Origin: Octopus bimaculoides
Taxonomy: Eukaryota
Direction: 5' to 3'
Length of the DNA: 46,993 nt
Assembly: GCF_001194135.2 (NCBI RefSeq)
Contig: NC_068987.1
Location: 17,914,669-17,961,661 of the forward strand
Every line of letters starts with the position of its first letter. Position 1 is the first letter of the stretch. Under the pieces are notes generated by a model, which made no database searches, had not been told where the DNA came from, and worked only from the letters and a program-made list of their open reading frames with translations. The position numbers were made by a program, and so were the translations under genes. Of this stretch, positions 15,891 through 43,201 are shown piece by piece.

Positions 15891-16944
15891 TAAAAACACA
15901 TGTCCGTGGTATACTCAGCCGCTTGTATGCAAATTGAATGAGTCGGTAATTCAGTTGATTGAACACCTGGAATATTTATTGAGGAAACCAACGATGGAAA
16001 TCTACTTTATTATATCTGTAAGCTCTTTTTAAGTAGATATAAATATTCATATATTCATTAATGTATAGAGCCGGGCGTATATGTGTGTTTGCATGTGTGT
16101 ATATTGGTATTTTTGTATATGTGTTTCTGTGTGTGTGTATTGGTTGCTTGGTGTGACTTGCGAAGGTAAATAAACTCATGTATATATCATTCAATGCATA
16201 TACGATTAAATATGCATTCATACACACATACACGCGCACAGCAATGTACACATGTGCACATACACACACACAGGTACACACATAAGCAATTACATGTAAG
16301 AATATACGTCATATATGAGATTCAACGCAGAGAAAAGAATACAGAAACGCAGACATATTCATACATAAATATGTGTGTATATACGCACACACACACACAC
16401 ACTCACGCGCGGTCACTATTTCTCTCTCTCACACACGCACATACACATGCACGTACGAACACACACACACATATGTATGCACATGCATACACGCATTCAT
16501 GTATACTTACATACATACCTACGTTACGTACATACATACGTACGTTCATGTATGTGTGTGTACATGTCTCTCTACACACACGTGCGTGTGTGCGCCCGCG
16601 TGTATGTGTATGGAATGTGTATGTATGTTCGTATCCTTGTCTATGCCTTTCATTAAATATGCATACGTTATACTTCACCAACAGAGTTGAAAAACATACC
16701 CTGTGATATATAGGAATGCGTAGGAATTCATAGCAATATATTTAATTCACGTTTGTGAACTCTTATAGCATTAAATAAACGTTTTCACTTCTATAATAAT
16801 ATATTTTTATGTATAAATATATATACGTTTCCTCTTTATAATTAGAAAAACATATAACATATAAATATATATTTAAAATATATGCGAAAAACAAATGATG
16901 CTTGTGTTATTTTTGCTGAGAGTTCTTTTTTTTTGTGGTTATAG

Positions 16945-17958: not shown

Positions 17959-18376
17959 AACTACACCTAGTAGATATAGTCCTCTATTCTGGGATAGTAA
18001 TTATCTCAGCCCACATGATTTACCTATATTTCCTCAAACGTGAATTGAATCTATTATTTTATTTTCTCATGCAACTTTTTTAAATGTTAGCTTAACTGAG
18101 ATTGATCGTTTCATAGTCTAAAATGTTTCGTTTCAAATACTGAAACATTAATACTTTATCATTTAAATCTGAATCACAACAATCTCTAATTCATTCGGAA
18201 GTGTTCTCTGTAGCAGATGTATTTTGTTTCAACAAAAGCCTGATATGTAGTTTTTAACACAACATGTTTATGAAGACATTTTCTCTCAGACGAAACCACA
18301 GCATCATATCTTTTCAATGGTGTGTACTCGTCAGCTATGACACAAAGATGGCTATTTCAATATTATGACGTTGCAA

Positions 18377-18594
18377 AGGCGGTGATCTGCCAGAAACGTT
18401 AGCACGCCGGGCGAAATGCTTAGCAGTATTTCATCCGTCTTTATGTTCTGTGTTCAAATTCTGCTGAGGTCGACTTTGCTTTTCATCCTTTTGGGGTTCC
18501 TAAATTACGTATCAGTTGCGTTCTGGGTTCGATCTAATCAACAGGCCCTTCCCCCAAAATTCCGGGCCTTGTGCCTAGAGTAGAAAAGAATATG
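18377..18594 (+). mobile_element. tRNA-derived SINE, family B
   Basis: AGGCGGTGATCTGCCAGAAACGTTAGCACGCCGGGCGAAATGCTTAG head, GTGTTCAAATTC B-box, tail ...GTGCCTAGAGTAGAAAAGAAT. Confidence 0.88.
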
Positions 18595-19234
18595 ATGTTT
18601 CGATTGCAGCAATATTTCTCTTGCCTTTCCGGTTGTTGATATTACCTGTTGGTGCCACTTTTGACAAAGATATCACGCAATTTTGTTTGCTATTCTTGTT
18701 TTGCTTTTTGTTTTTTTTTTGGGGGGGGGGCTTTTTGTTTATGGCGTGTTTTTCGTAGGTGGAGGTGTCTATCAGGAAGCAGGAATGAACTCACAACGTA
18801 CAAAACCCAATCAGATTTTGCAAGCCATGTCTTTTCTCAGTATAACCCTTCCTTGCATGTCATTGTCTGTTCCCGGTACTTTATTTAATGATTTCAAATT
18901 AAGGAAAAACAATACAATCCTCAATGGGATTTGGACTCAGAGAGTTGGAAGAAACAATGCTTTATATGTTCTGACGTTCAAAAGACTCTGTCGCAGTTCG
19001 CCACTTGAGATTAAACAACAAAAAACGCCATAAATATAAAATGACTACTTTGCTTCTCGTTATAATATGCGAAAGTTACTTGGGGCAATATCCTTCATAA
19101 AAAAATCTATTTTGTTTTACAAGACTCTCACATCGTGTGAGAAAATGATAAATAGATATTGATTTACAACAGTTACATTATTAATAGATGTATTGGAGAT
19201 GGCGGTGGTTGACATTTAAGTTGACTGCATTAGT

Positions 19235-20300
19235 TACTCTGGACTTAGAATAGCCTCTGATTTAGGCTCAACACCAGGAATTATAAGGAGGTCGATACTA
19301 TCGACCCCAGTATTTTACTATATCCACACCGGAGCAATTCAAAGGTAAAGTTGTGTTCGACAGAACGTAAATAGCGGGAAGAAATACGATGAAGCAATTT
19401 TCTGACGCTCTAACGATTCTTCTACCTCACCGCCTAATTCTGGACTTACAATTCTTTCGCACAAGGACAGAAATTCTGAGGCGAGGGGACAAGTCTATAA
19501 CATCGACTCCAATGGTTGACTGGCATTTTATCTTTGAGGCCCAAGAGGGATTAAAAGTAACGTTATCATCAATGAAATTTGAGCTAAGAATGTGAAGATT
19601 CGGAAGAAATTAAGTGAAGCATTTTCTCATTCACGGTTTTCCAGCTCACCATCTTATTCTGAACATATAGTTTTCTCTTCTACGGGCAATATGCTTGAAT
19701 TCAGAGGTGAAACAAGGCTAGTTGATTACATTGACCGCCATTGCTCAAATAATATTTATGTTATCAACACCCGAAATACTGAAAGGCAAAGTTGACTTCG
19801 ATGAAATTTGAACTTAGAATGTAAAGAACCGGAAGAAATACCGTACTATCGAGCATTTATCTAACCATACATCCAGTTCATCGTTTAATTCTGAACTTAT
19901 AATTATTTCTTTATTGCTCACAGGCGGGGCGGCTAAACACAGAGGGGGCAAACAAGGACAGACAAAGGGATTACGGTCGATGTAATCTACCCCAGTGCGT
20001 AACTGGTACTTATTTAATTGACACCCAAATGATGAAAGGCAAAGTCCACCTCAGTGGAATTTGAACTCAGAACGTAACGGCAGACGAAATACCGCCAAGT
20101 ATTCTGCCCGGCGTGCTTACGAATCTGCCAGCTCGCCGCTCTCTACTTCTGAACTTATAATGTCATCATTTGAGAAATGAAAGTCAGAGTCTATTCCAAT
20201 GGGATTTGAACCCAGAGCCAAAGAAGATAATTACTAATTGCCATAGATAATTAATGATCATTTGTCGCTCTTGTGGTTCAGCATTCTGCCCACTTACTCT
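19235..20300 (-). mobile_element. Tandem array of five family-B-type SINE copies separated by a recurring ~18-bp direct repeat
   Basis: SINE bodies at about 19251-19435, 19452-19654, 19671-19886, 19903-20140 and 20161-20300 (partial). Spacer cores at 19237, 19438, 19657, 19889 and 20147. Confidence 0.8.
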
Positions 20301-23128: not shown

Positions 23129-23164
23129 TTAGTATACCTTCTACTGCTTAATGACCAATGTTAG

Positions 23165-23877
23165 CGATTTCGGGTGTTTCCAGTCCAATATCTGCCTTTT
23201 GGATTCTGAGTCAAAATGATCGACCCAAGTCATATCTCCTGTGACCATTATCACCATAGAATCTTTGCATTCATCGTAGTAGCATTCGAGTAAGCGCTGA
23301 CAGATTTCCACACGATTGTCTTACGCGCTTCGATAAGCTCTCTTGGAACCCGTTTCGCACAGATTATACGCAAGTGAAACTGGCCGTGAAGGATTTCGTA
23401 TGCAGAGCCATGACTAATTCGCAGAGAACATGCTACCTCATCGAGGGTCTCTCTTCTTCTCACCAGAGCAATCTCACGTGAATTTTCACGTCAGTGGTGG
23501 AAGTTGATGGGCGTCCTGCTCCCTCTTCGTGCTTCACATTTATTAGGCTGTTTTTAAACTTCACGATTCACTGATACACACTTCTAGGCGCTAGTGCGCT
23601 GTTCTTGTACTGTACTGAAAACCTGTGATGAATTTCAGCCACTGACATTCCTTCAGATAGAGAAACTGCATCACTGATCTCAGTTCATCCTTGGTGCACA
23701 CTGCCTGCAGAGTGGCCATGTTTACTCTGCAACAGAAGAAAGAAAACCGAAACGATCAAGTTCAAACCTAGATCACATTACAAGTGTACCAACTCTTATC
23801 ACGCGAGTGCTAAAGTCAGCGCAGCCACAATAAAGAAAATCTTCGCGAAAGTGTGAATAATTTTTGACTTCTTATGC
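23165..23877 (-). mobile_element. Decayed mariner (Tc1/mariner, DD34D-type) transposon, 5' half
   Basis: Minus strand MATLQAVCTKDELRSVMQFL..EGMSVAEIHHR...GAGRPSTST...TLDEVACSLRISHGSAYEILH....IICAKRVPREL...VTGDMTW...DSESKRQILDWKHP contains the GRP, KWVP-like and VTGDETW-like motifs. A TIR-like end lies near 23850-23877. Confidence 0.88.
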
Positions 23878-25821: not shown

Positions 25822-26256
25822 ATTATTCAGTTTTATTTCAAGATTTCTTGCCAGTAGAGAAAGAGTTGGTCTCTAACATAGATCCAAGGCTCCTTCATTG
25901 GAATTTCTATATTAGCAACAAGGTATGTATGTATGTATGTATGTATGTATGTATGTATGTATGTGTGCAGATTTATATGCTTTGTTTTATGCATGTATTC
26001 TCATGCATATACTTGCATATCTAGACATGCTCATATATACTTAAATAATAAGCTTCAGGAAAGTTTTACAGATCTTTACAGTTCCAGTGATAGATTGGTT
26101 TTGTAGTCTTCGAATCAGCCTTCTCCTTTCTGGCTTTGAAAAGCCTAATTTTTCAAGATTGGTATTTAGGCTGTGTGTTATATATCCCAGTGCAACAATA
26201 ATTACAGGTATAAGCCTGAACTCGTAGCCTGAAGAGAGTAACTGCAGATTTCTCAA
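25822..26256 (-). mobile_element. 3' end (ORF C-terminus plus 3' UTR) of an R4/Dong-clade RLE retrotransposon
   Basis: LRNLQLLSSGYEFRLIPVIIVALGYITHSLNTNLEKLGFS...LQNQSITGTVKICKTFL*; the same family as 41140-41760 (LRHLQLLYPDYKFRFV). Confidence 0.8.
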
Positions 26257-27697
26257 TAATTCAGCGTATATAAGTATGCATGGATTTATGTATGTATGTA
26301 TGTATGTGTTTATACCACAGTGTAAGTTTTTAACATAAAGGAAATAAGATGTCTTCTCTTACATACTTATCAGAATACGAACACATGAATACATAGAATG
26401 ACGAATTGACTTGTATTCATCTTAGGTAGGAATTACTGTCGGTAAGAATATAGATTTGTTTGTATCCAACTCAATATATTACCGATTCTTCTCCGCATCA
26501 TATTTTAAGGATGGAACCCTGCTAGTGTATCTATGAATATACAAACGTCATGCCATTGTGTAGATACGGTACATCTGCACTATAACCATTTATTGCATTG
26601 TCAGATAAATGCGTTCGCCTTTTTTTTTGTGGTGGAGTTTCCTATTCATCTTAATCCTTTCCAATATTATATGAATTAACACGTAAAATATTTTTATCGT
26701 GGTATTTTTATGGATGGGTTTGTGTAGCTCTGTTCTTTCCCTACAATTTATATTCAGCATTTTGAAAATTTGAGAAGTAATTTTTCCTCTTTTCCGACAT
26801 ATGCCGATTGAGTGTGCCAAGCAGAACAAAACGAAGAAATTTATCTGACAACCCAATACTACCAACTTCATATATATCTGTTGACTTTGTAACTGTATAG
26901 GTAATCGCATTTTCACAATAGTTTTCATTTTAAAAATTTAACCAGGTGTCATCTTCAAGCAAAAGACGTTATATACGAAATTAATCGATATTAATTGCTA
27001 GAATTGAATTTCAGAAACGAGTTAATATCTTTCGAATGAAAATAATTACCACTTAATTCAGTTATACTTTTGAATAAGCAAAAGCCTATTCTTTCTATTA
27101 TATGAATTTCACTTTGGTTTAGCTGTTAAAATCTAATAAAAAATCTATAATTAATTGCCTTTCACACGTCTTTTATTTCCATTTTGTTCATTTGGATTTC
27201 AATGAATTCGTTTGACAGTAGATCTAACTAAATGCATAGCAACATGTAAGAGATACGTTTAGGATGAGATCAAAGCCTTGAGCTAAACTTCTTGAATGCA
27301 GAAACGAATATAAGACTTCGTTACATGATACCACCAATTTAATGATACTGATGATATTAAATCCGATAAAATTCTTAGATCCTTATCCCGGCTATCCATG
27401 GAAACGTTTGCAGTTCATTAGATACTAATTCAACTTTTAGTCCGCCATTGTAGAGCTGAGATTTCCCGCATCTTTCATCTACTTTCAGATTGTTTTGAAG
27501 AATAAGATGTAAATCTCAACGAGTAAAATAATCCACGAAAGTGGTTGTATTGACGTTATGTTCTGGAATGTTGTATGTGATTATATAGCGGGATGATTGT
27601 AATATAATATATTAGGTTATAATGCGAAAGCTACATGTTTGCTATTATGTAAAATTATATCCAGTTCAATGCATAGCGAAGCCAACAGCCTCAGTGC

Positions 27698-32634: not shown

Positions 32635-33805
32635 AGGCGTAGGAGTGGCTGTGTGGTAAGTAGCTCGCTTACCAACCACATGGTTGCGGATTCAGTCCCA
32701 CTGCGTAGCACCTTGGGCAAGTGTCTTCTACTATAGCCTCGGGCCGACCAAAGCCTTGTGAGGGGATTTGGTAGACGGAAACTGAAAGAAATCCGTCGTT
32801 TATATACATATATATATNNNNNNNNNNNNNNNNNNNNNNNNNNNNNNNNNNNNNNNNNNNNNNNNNNNNNNNNNNNNNNNNNNNNNNNNNNNNNNNNNNN
32901 NNNNNNNNNNNNNNNNNNNNNNNNNNNNNNNNNNNNNNNNNNNNNNNNNNNNNNNNNNNNNNNNNNNNNNNNNNNNNNNNNNNNNNNNNNNNNNNNNNNN
33001 NNNNNNNNNNNNNNNNNNNNNNNNNNNNNNNNNNNNNNNNNNNNNNNNNNNNNNNNNNNNNNNNNNNNNNNNNNNNNNNNNNNNNNNNNNNNNNNNNNNN
33101 NNNNNNNNNNNNNNNNNNNNNNNNNNNNNNNNNNNNNNNNNNNNNNNNNNNNNNNNNNNNNNNNNNNNNNNNNNNNNNNNNNNNNNNNNNNNNNNNNNNN
33201 NNNNNNNNNNNNNNNNNNNNNNNNNNNNNNNNNNNNNNNNNNNNNNNNNNNNNNNNNNNNNNNNNNNNNNNNNNNNNNNNNNNNNNNNNNNNNNNNNNNN
33301 NNNNNNNNNNNNNNNNNNNNNNNNNNNNNNNNNNNNNNNNNNNNNNNNNNNNNNNNNNNNNNNNNNNNNNNNNNNNNNNNNNNNNNNNNNNNNNNNNNNN
33401 NNNNNNNNNNNNNNNNNNNNNNNNNNNNNNNNNNNNNNNNNNNNNNNNNNNNNNNNNNNNNNNNNNNNNNNNNNNNNNNNNNNNNNNNNNNNNNNNNNNN
33501 NNNNNNNNNNNNNNNNNNNNNNTATATATATATATATATAGATGTATGTATGTATGTATGTATGTATGTATGTATGTATGTGTGTGTGTATAAGTTCGTG
33601 TGTCTGTGTTTGTCCCCCCAACATCACTTGACAACCGATGCTGGTGTGTTTACGTCCCCATAACTTAGTGGTTCAGCAAAAGAGACTGATAGAATAAGTA
33701 CTAGGTTTACAAAGAATAAGTCATGGGGTCGATTTCATCGACTAAAGGCGGTGCTCCAGCATGGCCGCAGTCACATGACTGAAGCAAGTAAAAGAGTAAA
33801 AGAGA
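32635..33805 (+). mobile_element. Composite SINE, family A, with its internal microsatellite collapsed into a 705-N gap
   Basis: Head AGGCGTAGGAGTGGCTGTGTGGTAAG...GGATTCAGTCCCA (A/B boxes) before the gap; 3' half ...GCTCCAGCATGGCCGCAGTCACATGACTGAAGCAAGTAAAAGAG after it. Confidence 0.88.
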
Positions 33806-40616: not shown

Positions 40617-41139
40617 GTAATACACAATGTTACATCTTTTTTCCGACTTTGGTGGCCGCATTTCCTTCACCAGAGATAAAACTTTTAAAGTTTAGGTTTT
40701 TTAAAAATTTAACTTTTTTTGAAAGAGTTTTTCCACAACAACTGTATGATCTTATAAAAAAAGCCGAAAGAGTTGTAAATGAGTATAAAGGAACAAATAA
40801 GAATGAAAATTCCAAGCGGTCCGGTGTGTATAACATAAATTTCCATGTCTTATGATTACTAGAATTACAAGATTATATCTATACCTACACTAAACTATAT
40901 GCCTGAATAAGGATGAGTGGAGATCAATATAGGAGAACTCAGCATTTAATTTATTTTATCTGATGTAATTTTCTGTATATAGATTGTGATTGCCCAACCT
41001 CGGGGTTATATAATAAAAATATATATGTATATATTTGATTGTATTCCCAATTTGAATATGTATTGGCCGAACTAGAAGGATGATAAACTAAACTGTTTTC
41101 TCTCCCTCCTTGAACTTTGATATTTGCTCAGTATATTGA

Positions 41140-41760
41140 GCCCTTCCGTGTTGTTTCTTGGAATCCACAAATCTGAACTTGTAATCTGGATAGAGTAACT
41201 GCAGATGCCTCAATAGTTTAGTATAGGTGTTCTCTTTTCACTGATTTTCAGTTTTATGTTAACATCAGCAGTTAATTTCCACAACTGTGCACATTTTCTC
41301 TTCTCTGTCCCAAATCATCATATCAGGTCTGTTGTGCTTACATTTTATTGAGGTCTTTCACCAGTATTCCTTTTTATTATGAGTGACTATGGCTTCTACC
41401 ATATTGTGTGTTCTTATTTCTTAGTCCTGAGGATTATCCTTCCGATGGATTTCATTATAGAGTGTCCTAGCTACGTCATGTCTCATCGGTAGATAATACA
41501 GTGATGACATTTGGAGTTCTGTCGTCCAAATTTTCTTAATTCGGCTGTAATATTCTTTAGTGATACGTGTTTTATTACAGGTGCCATTGTAAGATATACT
41601 TTCATCCACCCCTAGACACCTGCAACATTCCTCGTCAGATACAGGGAAAGCGGTCAAATCATTGGTGGAGATGTTACTAGTCTGGTCTATAATTTTCCTC
41701 CATTTCACAACCATATTACAACATTTATCCTGACCAAACTCCAACCTACACCTTTTGAGA
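41140..41760 (-). mobile_element. Internally deleted R4/Dong-clade non-LTR retrotransposon (RT tail, RHD knuckle region and restriction-like endonuclease)
   Basis: MEFGQDKC...C.CLGVDE...KEYYSRIKKIWTTEL, then YYLPMRHDVARTLYNE, then KHNRPDMMIWDREEKMCTVVEI (PD..D/E-type RLE motif), then LRHLQLLYPDYKFRFV. Confidence 0.88.
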
Positions 41761-43000
41761 ATGTTGTAACTAGGTTAAGGCTCTTTTGTATGTATGTATG
41801 TATGTATGTATGCATGTATGTATGTATGTATGTATGTATGTATGTATGCATGTATGCATGTATGCATGTGTGTGTGTGTATGTGCGCGTGCGTGCATGTG
41901 TCTATATTACTCATATATGTTCGTGCTATTGTTGTAATATTGTGTGAATTCATTTTGTAAAGAATTCCTGGTAGAATATCGAATGTTGACCAAGCATTTC
42001 CATGGACAGTTCTGATTCTCATAGCCAGACATAAATATTTATAATTGTTTAGATTAAACCAACACACAGTCAAAGGTTAATAATAAAGTTATATCAGGTT
42101 GCCTGACCTCATACATACACACACAAACACACACACACACACACANNNNNNNNNNNNNNNNNNNNNNNNNNNNNNNNNNNNNNNNNNNNNNNNNNNNNNN
42201 NNNNNNNNNNNNNNNNNNNNNNNNNNNNNNNNNNNNNNNNNNNNNNNNNNNNNNNNNNNNNNNNNNNNNNNNNNNNNNNNNNNNNNNNNNNNNNNNNNNN
42301 NNNNNNNNNNNNNNNNNNNNNNNNNNNNNNNNNNNNNNNNNNNNNNNNNNNNNNNNNNNNNNNNNNNNNNNNNNNNNNNNNNNNNNNNNNNNNNNNNNNN
42401 NNNNNNNNNNNNNNNNNNNNNNNNNNNNNNNNNNNNNNNNNNNNNNNNNNNNNNNNNNNNNNNNNNNNNNNNNNNNATATGTATATTGATATGTATTGAT
42501 ATATACGCTTGCATGCATGTGAGCGCGTATTTATTGTCGTCTATTGATAGTTTATGAATATTATATAGTCTCACTCAGTTAGACGCTTGCGTGATTCTAT
42601 TAACCAGATAATGAAAACGTCCTCAGTTTCAGCACACGGATGGTAAATGAAGGTATGGATGAATGAATGAGTAAATAAATAAATGAATTATAAATGAATG
42701 AATGAATGAATGAATGAATGAATGAACTTATAGATGCCGTAATAAATGACTGTATTCACCTGATATACGTGTCAACATATTAAAACCTAATGTCAGTAAA
42801 CATAGAAATGTAAGACTTCATGCATCTACAATACTAAACCCATATCTGTCTACCTCTCCTTCTCTCTATCTCTATCTCTTCATATATGCGTGTGTTTGTG
42901 TATGTACGCATGTATACATACATATATATGTATGTATACATACGTACATTCATGTATATATACATACACACATGTGTGTCTGTGTGTATGCATGTATTTG

Positions 43001-43201
43001 TCTTTTTTACTCTTTTTATTTGTTTCAGTCATTTGACTGCGGTCATGCTGGAGCACCGCCTTTAGTCGAACAAATCGACCCCAGCACTTATTCTTTGTAA
43101 GCCTAGTACTTATTCTATCGGTCTCATTTACCGAACCGCTAAGTTACAGAGACGTATACACACCAACATCGGTTGTCAAGGGGGACAAACACAGACACAC
43201 A

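What the first reader, a model, noticed from the sequence alone, without database searches (positions are those of the whole stretch)
19235..20300. Repeat-spacer-like SINE stack: five SINEs interleaved with a locus-specific 18-bp direct repeat that drifts stepwise
Seen: the motif recurs at every SINE junction. The 14-bp cores are CTCTGGACTTAGAA (19237), TTCTGGACTTACAA (19438), TTCTGAACATATAG (19657), TTCTGAACTTATAA (19889) and TTCTGAACTTATAA (20147), spaced 201, 219, 232 and 258 bp; the wider consensus is AATTCTGAACTTATAATT. The other family-B SINEs in the window (7273, 7511, 12548, 18377) lack the motif, so it is not part of the SINE. Copy 4 is much closer to consensus, has a different 3' tail (TTTCTTTATTGCTCACAGG...GGACAGACAAAGGGATTA) and is flanked by two identical cores. 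Cores 1-2 share GG and cores 3-5 share GA. Known: target-primed retrotransposition duplicates the target site. Inference: SINEs of different ages inserted one after another at the same site and regenerated it each time, giving a polarised record of retroposition. That would imply a sequence-specific partner endonuclease, and RLE-type R4/Dong elements are present in this window.
Basis: partly seen in the sequence, partly recalled or inferred. Interest (0 to 1): 0.75.

Follow-up and report, generated by a model that had tools for sequence, protein, structure and literature searches.

The report
SINE stack on one target site
Four SINEs plus a fragment of a fifth lie head-to-tail in an octopus-type genome, separated by copies of the 16-18 bp piece of host DNA that is duplicated at each insertion. 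This is a tidy example of a known habit of mobile elements, not evidence for a special sequence-reading enzyme.

Summary
It occupies every SINE junction on the strand on which the SINEs read (minus). It behaves as a target-site duplication (TSD). It starts at the base after each SINE 3' end and runs up to the 3 bases (TAG/AAG/TAA) that precede the next SINE head. Its 16-18 nt length matches the TSDs of solitary family members. It is absent from the junctions of 19 other copies in this window and in two loci fetched from Octopus vulgaris and O. sinensis. Copy 4 belongs to another subfamily and inserted into an existing spacer. Its own TSD (15/15, 17/18) explains the two identical cores. Copies 1-3 are equally old (67-70% to consensus), so there is no age gradient. 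With 19 copies they no longer cluster (bootstrap 84% falls to 14%) and share at most one exclusive substitution. They are therefore either three insertions into the regenerated TSD (about 0.5) or one insertion duplicated almost at once (about 0.33). Head-to-tail neighbours are a family habit: 5 seen against 0.21 expected outside the array. Nothing supports an 18-bp-specific endonuclease or a chronological record. This is a known kind (double insertion into one target).

The parts
19237..19252 (-). Spacer copy M1 (SINE sense ATTCTAAGTCCAGAGT), directly after the 3' end of U1; it is followed by unique flank.
   Evidence: 13/14 identical to M2 from the first base after the SINE end, p=0.003. As a 14-mer alone it is at chance level.
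19253..19436 (-). U1, an old full-length SINE with internal deletions; head GCGGTGAGGTAG preceded by TAG.
   Evidence: nhmmer E=3e-11; 69% identical to the 16-copy consensus.
19437..19452 (-). Spacer copy M2 (ATTGTAAGTCCAGAAT).
19453..19655 (-). U2, an old full-length SINE; head ATGGTGAGCTGG preceded by AAG.
   Evidence: nhmmer E=5e-19; 67% to consensus; nearest copy in the tree is A7273, 12 kb away.
19656..19671 (-). Spacer copy M3 (ACTATATGTTCAGAAT).
19672..19887 (-). U3, an old full-length SINE; head ACGATGAACTGG preceded by TAA.
   Evidence: nhmmer E=2e-21; 70% to consensus.
19886..19903 (-). Spacer copy M4, which is also the downstream TSD copy of copy 4 (ATTATAAGTTCAGAATTA). Its last two bases (19886-19887, the TA of TAA) overlap the U3 feature.
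   Evidence: 17/18 identical to 20144-20161, with 15/15 over the core; p=0.001.
19904..20143 (-). Copy 4 (U4), a SINE of another subfamily with a different 3' domain (...TAATCCCTTTGTCTGTCCTTGTTTG...GAGCAATAAAGAAATA). It inserted into a pre-existing spacer.
   Evidence: Clade with L005:17726, L006:5495 and L006:16461 at 99% bootstrap; 88% identical to the majority of those three; 14 CpG retained against 6-10 in U1-U3.
20144..20161 (-). Spacer copy M5, the upstream TSD copy of copy 4 (ATTATAAGTTCAGAAGTA).
20162..20300 (-). U5, a remnant of an older related SINE (5' half only: part of the head and the B-box region). It is the pre-existing flank upstream of the spacer.
   Evidence: nhmmer E=0.002 for model positions 90-131 only; local alignment to consensus positions 63-111, p=0.002.
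7272..7749 (-). Comparison locus: two family copies head-to-tail (A7511 then A7273), with ATT-rich direct repeats before, between and after them. This is the same spacer-SINE-spacer-SINE-spacer architecture.
   Evidence: TRF period 235, 76%. TSD of A7511 is 17/20, p=0.001. The two copies share no derived base. A7511 groups with A18377, not with its neighbour: 88% bootstrap with 8 copies, 50% with 19 copies.
12550..12925 (-). Comparison locus: a 5'-truncated family copy (12856-12925), then (CTT)n and (ATG)n microsatellites, then the full copy A12548 (12550-12793), all head-to-tail.
18371..18598 (+). Comparison copy A18377, solitary, flanked by a candidate TSD AATATTATGACGTTGCA / AATATGATGTTTCGATTGCA. 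The alignment is weak on its own (score 8, shuffle p=0.19); it is read as a TSD because it starts at the first base after the SINE 3' end.

Best explanation
The region is a head-to-tail stack of short retroposons (SINEs with a tRNA-like B box) on the minus strand. It was built on one genomic target site. The 'locus-specific repeat' is that target. Target-primed reverse transcription duplicates the 16-18 nt between the two staggered nicks, so every insertion into the site leaves one copy on each side and the site stays available.

Shown: the site was used at least twice, by events far apart in time. One use was an old family member. The other was copy 4, a member of another subfamily, whose own TSD is the whole spacer.

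Inferred (about even odds against the duplication rival): the three old units U1-U3 are also separate insertions. They would have been made in a short burst by one old subfamily, each landing in a TSD copy left by the one before.

The re-use does not need an enzyme that reads the 18-mer. The family inserts at A/T-rich sites that start ATTAT/AATAT or lie in (ATT)n runs, and it very often inserts right beside an existing family member. The stack is the extreme case of that habit. It carries no readable chronology.
For: (1) Anatomy. In all eight window copies, a direct repeat begins at the first base after the SINE 3' end in six (U2 starts 4 bases in; A7511 3 bases in) and ends at or within a few bases of the SINE head. 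Length is 14-24 nt. The spacer is 16-18 nt and fits this exactly. There are n SINEs and n+1 spacer copies, and the stack's edges coincide with SINE ends.
(2) Copy 4 is independent. It has a different 3' domain. It forms a 99% bootstrap clade with copies from O. vulgaris and O. sinensis loci. It is 58% identical to its neighbour U3. Its TSD is 15/15 (17/18).
(3) The motif is not part of the SINE. It is absent from the junctions of 19 other copies.
(4) U1-U3 are no closer to each other (57-62%) than to unrelated copies (up to 68%).
(5) The {U1,U2,U3} grouping falls from 84% with 8 copies to 14% with 19 copies. U2 then pairs with A7273, and U1 with two O. vulgaris copies.
(6) Of the rare bases shared by all three, all but one also occur in unrelated old copies. 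Sharing between pairs (8/8/6 sites) is at chance level. All large indels are private.
(7) Family habit. Outside the array there are 5 same-strand neighbours with gaps of 70 nt or less among 20 copies in about 85 kb, against 0.21 expected; none of 5000 random placements reached 5. Neighbours that differ include A7511/A7273 (no shared derived base) and L006 5495/5729 and 16461/16687, which pair the copy-4-type subfamily with the B-type.
(8) The mechanism is established elsewhere: tandem TE dimers separated by a TSD arise by double insertion driven by insertion-site preference (PMC5932611).
Against: The three old spacers all have the same length (16 nt before the TAG/AAG/TAA that precedes each head). 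Duplication gives this for free, whereas independent events should vary by a few bases, as copy 4 does (18 nt).

U1-U3 have the same age within error.

No solitary copy of the same old type was found in the 43 kb of non-gap sequence in the window.

The spacer offers only a 5-nt ATTAT start. There are 6 such sites in the 883-bp stack before copy 4 arrived. Three successive hits on spacer copies is roughly a 5% outcome (my arithmetic) even if all the insertions fell in this kilobase.

The four intermediate-age copies in the window did not use the site.

Subfamily structure rests on only 19-21 copies.
Confidence: 0.5

Rival explanations
1. One old SINE inserted once. Its two identical 16-nt TSDs, and afterwards the near-identical 200-bp units, then mediated replication slippage or unequal exchange almost immediately. 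That produced SINE-plus-TSD tandem copies (U1-U3). Much later copy 4 inserted into one spacer.
For: It gives the same architecture: n units, n+1 spacers, edges at SINE ends. It explains at no cost the equal ages, the constant 16-nt spacer and the lack of solitary copies of the same old type in the window. Slippage between TSDs needs them intact, so it must happen early, and that fits the star-like relationship. Expansion of TE dimers by unequal exchange is documented (PMC5932611).
Against: There is no positive signal of common descent: 14% bootstrap with 19 copies, at most one exclusive shared substitution, and no shared large indel. The duplication would therefore have to fall within about the first 1% of the units' lifetime. 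Heterologous head-to-tail neighbours elsewhere show that independent insertion does produce such junctions in this family.
Confidence: 0.33
2. A sequence-specific (RLE-type, R4/Dong) endonuclease recognises the 18-bp motif, and SINEs of successively different ages were laid down in order, leaving a polarised chronological record.
For: Copy 4 re-used exactly the same nick positions. LINE-like ORF tails in the window are related to an RT-domain protein of O. sinensis whose only solved relative is an R2 protein.
Against: The motif is at 0 of 19 other SINE junctions. The only other motif-like sites lie inside a LINE-like ORF, not next to SINEs. TSDs of other copies are unrelated beyond an ATTAT/AATAT start. 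There is no age gradient among U1-U3, and the later unit is internal. The LINE-like repeat ends in (ATAC)n and shares no 3' end with the SINE. TSDs of 15-20 nt do not point to any particular endonuclease type (own knowledge).
Confidence: 0.05
3. The motif is the 3' tail of an old SINE subfamily. Each old unit (U5, U3, U2, U1) brought its own copy, and the array formed by duplication of SINE-plus-tail units.
For: Four old units are each followed by one motif copy. The 3' flank of A7273, the window copy closest to U1-U3 by HMM score, reads ATTATTATTTTTGTTCAGTAG and shares ATTAT, GTTCAG and TAG with the motif.
Against: There is no motif after any of 19 other copies, including six old ones. The A7273 flank matches its own upstream TSD copy better. 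U5 lacks the whole 3' half of the SINE, yet it is followed by the motif. The motif also lies upstream of copy 4, which belongs to another subfamily.
Confidence: 0.04
4. One retroposition event produced several units at once, either from a multimeric read-through transcript or by template switching between SINE RNAs.
For: Two composites in O. sinensis (L006 5495-5914 and 16461-16845) are a full copy-4-type SINE abutting a 5'-truncated B-type SINE. For 5495-5914 a single TSD pair flanks the whole composite (15/17); for 16461-16845 a weaker candidate pair does (about 10/13 by eye). This is what template switching would give.
Against: Those composites have no spacer between the elements. In the array every junction carries a full copy of the target sequence and every unit is full length, which template switching does not produce.
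Confidence: 0.03
5. Assembly artefact in a gapped draft.
For: The window has 16 runs of N.
Against: There is no gap between 15646 and 24982. The units differ by about 40%, so they cannot be collapsed or duplicated reads.
Confidence: 0.01

Closest known systems
Tandem TE dimers and arrays formed by double insertion into one target site (McGurk & Barbash 2018, PMC5932611; for example R1 elements separated by identical 33-nt rDNA duplications, and P-element dimers separated by the 8-bp TSD)
   Same: Complete elements lie head-to-tail with exactly one TSD copy between neighbours. The cause is insertion-site preference. Later growth by unequal exchange is possible.
   Different: Here the element is a non-autonomous SINE in an octopod. 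The target is a unique 16-18 nt sequence rather than rDNA or a promoter hotspot. The units are ancient (about 30% diverged). A member of another subfamily was added much later.
Alu elements inserting into the A-rich tails of older Alus (own knowledge: Jurka 1997; Levy et al. 2010)
   Same: A loose endonuclease or priming preference makes the 3' end of an existing SINE a favoured landing place, which gives head-to-tail SINE clusters.
   Different: The preferred sequence here is ATTAT/(ATT)n rather than poly(A)/TTAAAA. In this array the insertions re-use the TSD itself, so the spacer is unique sequence.
Microsatellite-targeting non-LTR retrotransposons (own knowledge: Dong in (TAA)n; Kibi/Koshi, Mino, Waldo; Kojima & Fujiwara 2004)
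   Same: Family copies in this data set often start their 3' flank with (ATT)n-type triplet repeats and sit inside such repeats, sometimes in tandem.
   Different: No autonomous partner was identified, and no shared LINE/SINE 3' end was found. The array's spacer is not a microsatellite.
TE-derived tandem repeats or young satellites made by unequal exchange
   Same: A regular period of about 200-230 bp made of SINE-plus-spacer units.
   Different: The units show no private shared mutations and no supported monophyly. There are only 3-4 units, and the boundaries coincide with element ends.
CRISPR-type repeat-spacer arrays (the resemblance in the finding's title)
   Same: A short repeat alternates with longer segments.
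   Different: The long segments are homologous copies of one SINE family, not unique spacers. The short repeat is duplicated host target DNA. The genome is eukaryotic. The resemblance is only visual.

Membership tests
SINE (non-autonomous non-LTR retroposon) | Short (under 500 bp) dispersed repeat present in many copies | tested here: met
   24 HMM hits of about 200-240 bp in the window and in two loci from O. vulgaris and O. sinensis.
SINE (non-autonomous non-LTR retroposon) | Flanking target-site duplications | tested here: met
   Direct repeats of 14-24 nt start at or within 4 bases of the SINE 3' end in all 8 window copies (at the first base in six), though only five reach shuffle p<0.05. 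One repeat is 15/17 in L006.
SINE (non-autonomous non-LTR retroposon) | Internal Pol III promoter or a small-RNA-derived head (tRNA-like) | tested here: inconclusive
   A B-box-like GAGTTCAAATTCC is conserved in all copies. ARAGORN and Rfam find no tRNA.
SINE (non-autonomous non-LTR retroposon) | 3' end shared with a partner LINE | tested here: not met
   No SINE-HMM hit at the LINE-like repeats (25.9-26.4 kb, 40.9-41.5 kb, L005 about 10 kb, L006 about 11 kb). Those repeats end in (ATAC)n. A partner may exist elsewhere in the genome.
TE tandem by double or multiple insertion into one target | Complete elements head-to-tail with exactly one TSD copy at each junction and one at each outer edge | tested here: met
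   Spacer copies at 19237, 19437, 19656, 19888 and 20144 bracket U1, U2, U3 and copy 4.
TE tandem by double or multiple insertion into one target | Neighbouring elements are of independent origin (different subfamily, truncation or age) | tested here: inconclusive
   Met for copy 4 against U3/U5. For U1-U3 there is only negative evidence: no shared private mutations, 14% bootstrap.
Tandem duplication / satellite-like array | Units form a clade with private shared mutations | tested here: not met
   84% bootstrap with 8 copies falls to 14% with 19 copies. There is one exclusive shared site, and pairwise sharing is at chance.
Tandem duplication / satellite-like array | Units more alike to each other than to dispersed copies | tested here: not met
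   57-62% among U1-U3 against up to 68% to copies at other loci.
Site-specific non-LTR system (R2/R4/Dong-like, RLE endonuclease) | The same target sequence at independent insertions genome-wide | tested here: not met
   0 of 19 other junctions carry the motif. The sample is only 89 kb.
Site-specific non-LTR system (R2/R4/Dong-like, RLE endonuclease) | An RLE-bearing autonomous element that shares its 3' end with the SINE | tested here: inconclusive
   The window ORF 41424-41774 is 62% identical to an O. sinensis RVT_1 protein whose only PDB relative is R2 (E=0.002). No RLE domain, no RT motif in the window, and no shared 3' end.

The most novel reading that the evidence does not exclude
The stack grew purely by accretion. 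In this octopod SINE family the junction left by an insertion (SINE 3' end plus the regenerated target) would itself be the preferred landing site. One unique 16-18 nt site would then have been hit four times or more over roughly 10^8 years by members of at least two subfamilies. The 20-fold or greater excess of head-to-tail neighbours seen in three loci would be a family-wide, self-reinforcing insertion bias. Such stacks would be datable insertion series and natural seeds of new tandem repeats.
Probability: 0.3. Interest if true: 0.5.

Novelty: new member of a known kind. Interest (0 to 1): 0.3.

Why it matters
SINEs make up about 11.6% of the O. vulgaris genome (PMC13282606). How they pile up shapes local genome structure and can seed tandem repeats. 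This locus, with the family-wide excess of head-to-tail neighbours, shows that octopod SINEs follow the 'double insertion into one target' route described in Drosophila. It also gives a concrete locus where orthologue comparison could date each step. It does not point to a new enzyme or a new class of element.

Tried and rejected
No population or cross-species view of this locus was possible.

(2) Same-locus look-ups. Three window ORFs were not on record.

(3) More SINE copies through spurious SINE peptides. The profile search gave 0 hits.

(4) Pattern scans of viral and metagenome contigs. They found only tRNA-like bacterial matches.

(5) A SINE consensus in the literature. None was found.

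(6) 'U1-U3 share TTTCTTCC, so they are tandem duplicates' was my early reading. I rejected it. The state also occurs in the neighbouring U0. One of the two bases (T at alignment column 92) recurs in L005:3690, and the associated small insertion recurs in L005:3690 and L005:10601.

(7) The spacer is the best conserved 18-nt window of the unit: 0.82-0.86 against a mean of 0.53. I rejected this as a discriminator. Both models predict equal divergence of spacer and body. The spacer also has no CpG and was picked out because it is conserved.

(8) 'U5's missing 3' half lies beyond M1' was rejected (p=0.1-0.2; no HMM hit).

(9) 'The stack sits inside an old LINE because the spacer resembles ATTACAAGTTCAGATTT in a LINE-like ORF' was rejected. 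The flanks do not align and the LINE HMM finds nothing in the array.

(10) 'Copy 4's re-use of the site is very improbable' was softened. Only 6 ATTAT sites exist in the 883-bp stack. However, another member of the copy-4 subfamily has a TSD that starts AGAAGT.

(11) Pfam on ten ORFs and PDB searches on two gave nothing.

Full report
OBSERVATION. With up to two mismatches the 14-mer has 5 matches in the window against 1.06 expected. Four of these lie within 710 bp on one strand. With three mismatches the count is at chance (14 against 12.6). Core 1 is therefore meaningful only because it lies exactly at the 3' end of the last SINE and extends to 14/20. Tandem Repeats Finder misses the array because the units are only about 60% alike. 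No assembly gap lies within 3.5 kb of it.

WHAT THE UNITS ARE. BLAST and a family HMM built from the four other copies in the window plus copy 4 show that the units are SINE copies reading on the minus strand.
- The head is GGCGAGCTGGCAG..., followed by a B-box-like GAGTTCAAATTCC and a central ...GGGGTCGATGTAATCGAC box.
- U1, U2 and U3 are full-length but old: E = 3e-11, 5e-19 and 2e-21, and 69, 67 and 70% identical to a 16-copy consensus.
- Copy 4 has a different 3' domain ending GAGCAATAAAGAAATA.
- The 'fifth SINE' (20162-20300) is only the 5' half of an older relative.
- ARAGORN and Rfam do not recognise a tRNA, so 'tRNA-derived' is an inference from the B box.

WHAT THE MOTIF IS. In SINE sense the motif reads ATTATAAGTTCAGAAT.
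- It begins at the first base after each SINE 3' end and ends 3 nt before the next head. These 3 nt (TAG/AAG/TAA) also precede the head of nearly every copy elsewhere.
- I aligned the 33 nt upstream and downstream of each of the eight window copies. Each gives a direct repeat of 14-24 nt that starts at or within 4 bases of the SINE end, at the very first base in six of the eight. Examples are A18377 (AATATTATGACGTTGCA / AATATGATGTTTCGATTGCA, a weak alignment on its own, p=0.19) and A7511 (17/20, p=0.001).
- The array's spacer has the length and position of a TSD of this family.
- There are n SINEs and n+1 spacer copies, and the stack ends at SINE boundaries.

COPY 4. Its flanking repeats are 15/15 identical, or 17/18 if extended by GTA/TTA. 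In the tree it forms a 99% bootstrap clade with three copies from O. vulgaris and O. sinensis. It is 88% identical to their majority sequence and 58% identical to its neighbour U3. It is therefore an independent, later insertion into an existing spacer, with the same nick positions. That alone explains why cores 4 and 5 are identical. It also means the 'consensus' and the 'drift' are biased, because one sequence is counted twice.

GETTING OUTSIDE SEQUENCE. Two LINE-like ORF tails in the window did find annotated proteins.
- P0001 (O. vulgaris) gave locus L005, 20.3 kb.
- P0009 (O. sinensis, RT domain) gave locus L006, 21.7 kb.
- These loci hold 14 more copies of the SINE family, so the window is from an octopod. 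That is an inference, and the species was not determined.
- None of the 14 copies, nor the five window copies outside the array, carries the motif at a junction.
- The only other motif-like sites (window 41168, L005 10209) lie in a conserved stretch of the LINE-like ORF. Neither the array nor its flanks match that repeat. I treat this as chance.

SERIAL INSERTION OR TANDEM DUPLICATION FOR U1-U3?
- With only the eight window copies, U1-U3 grouped at 84% bootstrap, and ten substitutions plus two small indels looked shared.
- With 19 copies the grouping falls to 14%. U2 pairs with A7273, and U1 with two O. vulgaris copies.
- Of the five rare states shared by all three units, four are also present in unrelated old copies. 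One exclusive site remains.
- Sharing between pairs (8, 8 and 6 sites) equals the chance expectation. All larger indels are private.
- The units are no closer to each other (57-62%) than to copies elsewhere (up to 68%).
Any duplication must have followed the founding insertion almost at once.
- Against serial insertion: the three units are equally old, and the three old spacers have the same 16-nt length whereas copy 4's TSD is 18 nt. No solitary copy of the same old type is in the window. The spacer offers only a 5-nt ATTAT start, one of six such sites in the 883-bp stack.
- I cannot separate the two models with the sequence at hand. I put serial insertion at about 0.5 and immediate TSD-mediated duplication at about 0.33.

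A FAMILY HABIT. Head-to-tail neighbours recur.
- A7511/A7273 have ATT-rich repeats before, between and after them. The two copies share no derived base, and A7511 groups with A18377 rather than with its neighbour (88% with 8 copies; 50% with 19 copies).
- A 5'-truncated copy, then microsatellites, then A12548.
- L005 3471/3690, with (ATT)n spacers.
- Two composites in L006. In each, a full copy-4-type SINE abuts a 5'-truncated B-type copy. For 5495-5914 a single TSD pair flanks the whole composite; for 16461-16845 only a weaker candidate pair does.
- Outside the array there are 5 such neighbours among 20 copies, against 0.21 expected under random placement. None of 5000 simulations reached 5.
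- Independent insertion next to an existing copy is therefore common in this family. This raises the prior for accretion. It also matches the mechanism documented in Drosophila: double insertion into one target, a TSD between the elements, and optional later unequal exchange (PMC5932611).

THE ENDONUCLEASE INFERENCE.
- TSDs of other copies share no more than an ATTAT/AATAT-like start, or lie in (ATT)n-type microsatellites. One member of copy 4's subfamily has a TSD starting AGAAGT.
- The motif is not a recurrent target (0/19).
- The window contains no RT active-site motif in any frame and no Pfam hit in ten candidate ORFs.
- The LINE-like ORF tails (26044-26358, 41424-41774) are related to an O. 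sinensis RVT_1 protein whose only solved relative is an R2 protein at E=0.002. An RLE-type LINE lineage may therefore be present.
- That repeat ends in (ATAC)n and shares no 3' end with the SINE. A partner relationship is unsupported.

VERDICT. This is a real, neat, TSD-separated SINE stack. Two independent uses of one target site are shown, and more are possible. There is no chronological polarity and no evidence for long-sequence specificity. It is a new member of a known kind.

Noticed in passing
L006:5495-5914 and L006:16461-16845 (O. sinensis): Two composites, each a full copy-4-type SINE directly abutting a 5'-truncated B-type SINE (starting at about position 18 and about position 52) with no spacer. 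The first is flanked as a whole by one TSD pair (AATATATTTGACTTACG / AATATATTTCACTTAGG, 15/17); for the second only a weaker candidate pair was seen (about 10/13, by eye). This looks like template switching between SINE RNAs, or very precise insertion at a 5' junction.
   Followed up: partly
window 7272-7749 (-): Two family copies in tandem with ATT/GTT-rich direct repeats before, between and after them. The copies belong to different lineages: they share no derived base, and A7511 groups with A18377.
   Followed up: yes
window 12550-12925 (-); also L005:34-215 and L005:3471-3945: The 3' ends of B-type copies are very often followed by triplet microsatellites that start with ATT: (ATT)n, (CTT)n, (ATG)n, (ACT)n, (ATC)n. 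Either the family has an (ATT)n tail that mutates and expands, or it targets such repeats.
   Followed up: partly
window 41168-41185 (-), 26215-26235 (-), L005:10209-10226 (+): A conserved coding stretch of a LINE-like repeat reads ATTACAAGTTCAGATTTG / ATTACAAGTTCAGGTTTA, 15/18 identical to the array's spacer. The array flanks do not match this repeat. Probably chance, but unexplained.
   Followed up: partly
window 25985-26358 (-) and 40950-41774 (-): ORF tails and 3' end of a LINE-like repeat ending in (ATAC)n. Relatives are an O. vulgaris hypothetical protein (84% identity) and an O. sinensis RVT_1 protein (62%). The latter's only PDB relative is an R2 protein (E=0.002).
   Followed up: partly
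window 23144-23490 (-): A frameshifted remnant of a mariner-type transposase. Its relatives carry PF17906 (HTH_48) and PF01359 (Transposase_1).
   Followed up: partly
window 18680-19030 (-): An old SINE-like element ('U0') whose head and B box resemble the family (E=4e-7), but whose body differs and whose tail is C-run/A-rich. It shares three rare bases with array units (two with all of U1-U3, one with U1 and U2). Its head lies about two unit lengths (403 bp) from the head of U1. The 205 bp in between show no SINE similarity.
   Followed up: partly
window 7250-7272 (-): The 3' flank of A7273 (ATTATTATTTTTGTTCAGTAG) shares ATTAT, GTTCAG and TAG with the array's spacer. A7273 is also the window copy closest to U1-U3 by HMM score. 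Borderline significance, noticed after the fact.
   Followed up: partly
window 20144-20182 (-): In U5 the spacer lies at exactly the offset (15 nt after TTTCAT) where the SINE has its internal box AAATTAAGTACCAG, with 8/16 identity (10/16 with one gap). The original target may have been that box of an older SINE, but the rest of that SINE is not detectable beyond M1.
   Followed up: partly
window 33689-33744 (+), 43063-43120 (-): Weak HMM hits to the central ...CTGGGGTCGAT... region, inside copies of a different SINE family. The two families may share a core domain.
   Followed up: no
whole window: Sixteen runs of N (10-947 bp) and dense di- and tetranucleotide microsatellites. This is a gapped draft assembly of repeat-rich, apparently non-coding DNA.
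   Followed up: no
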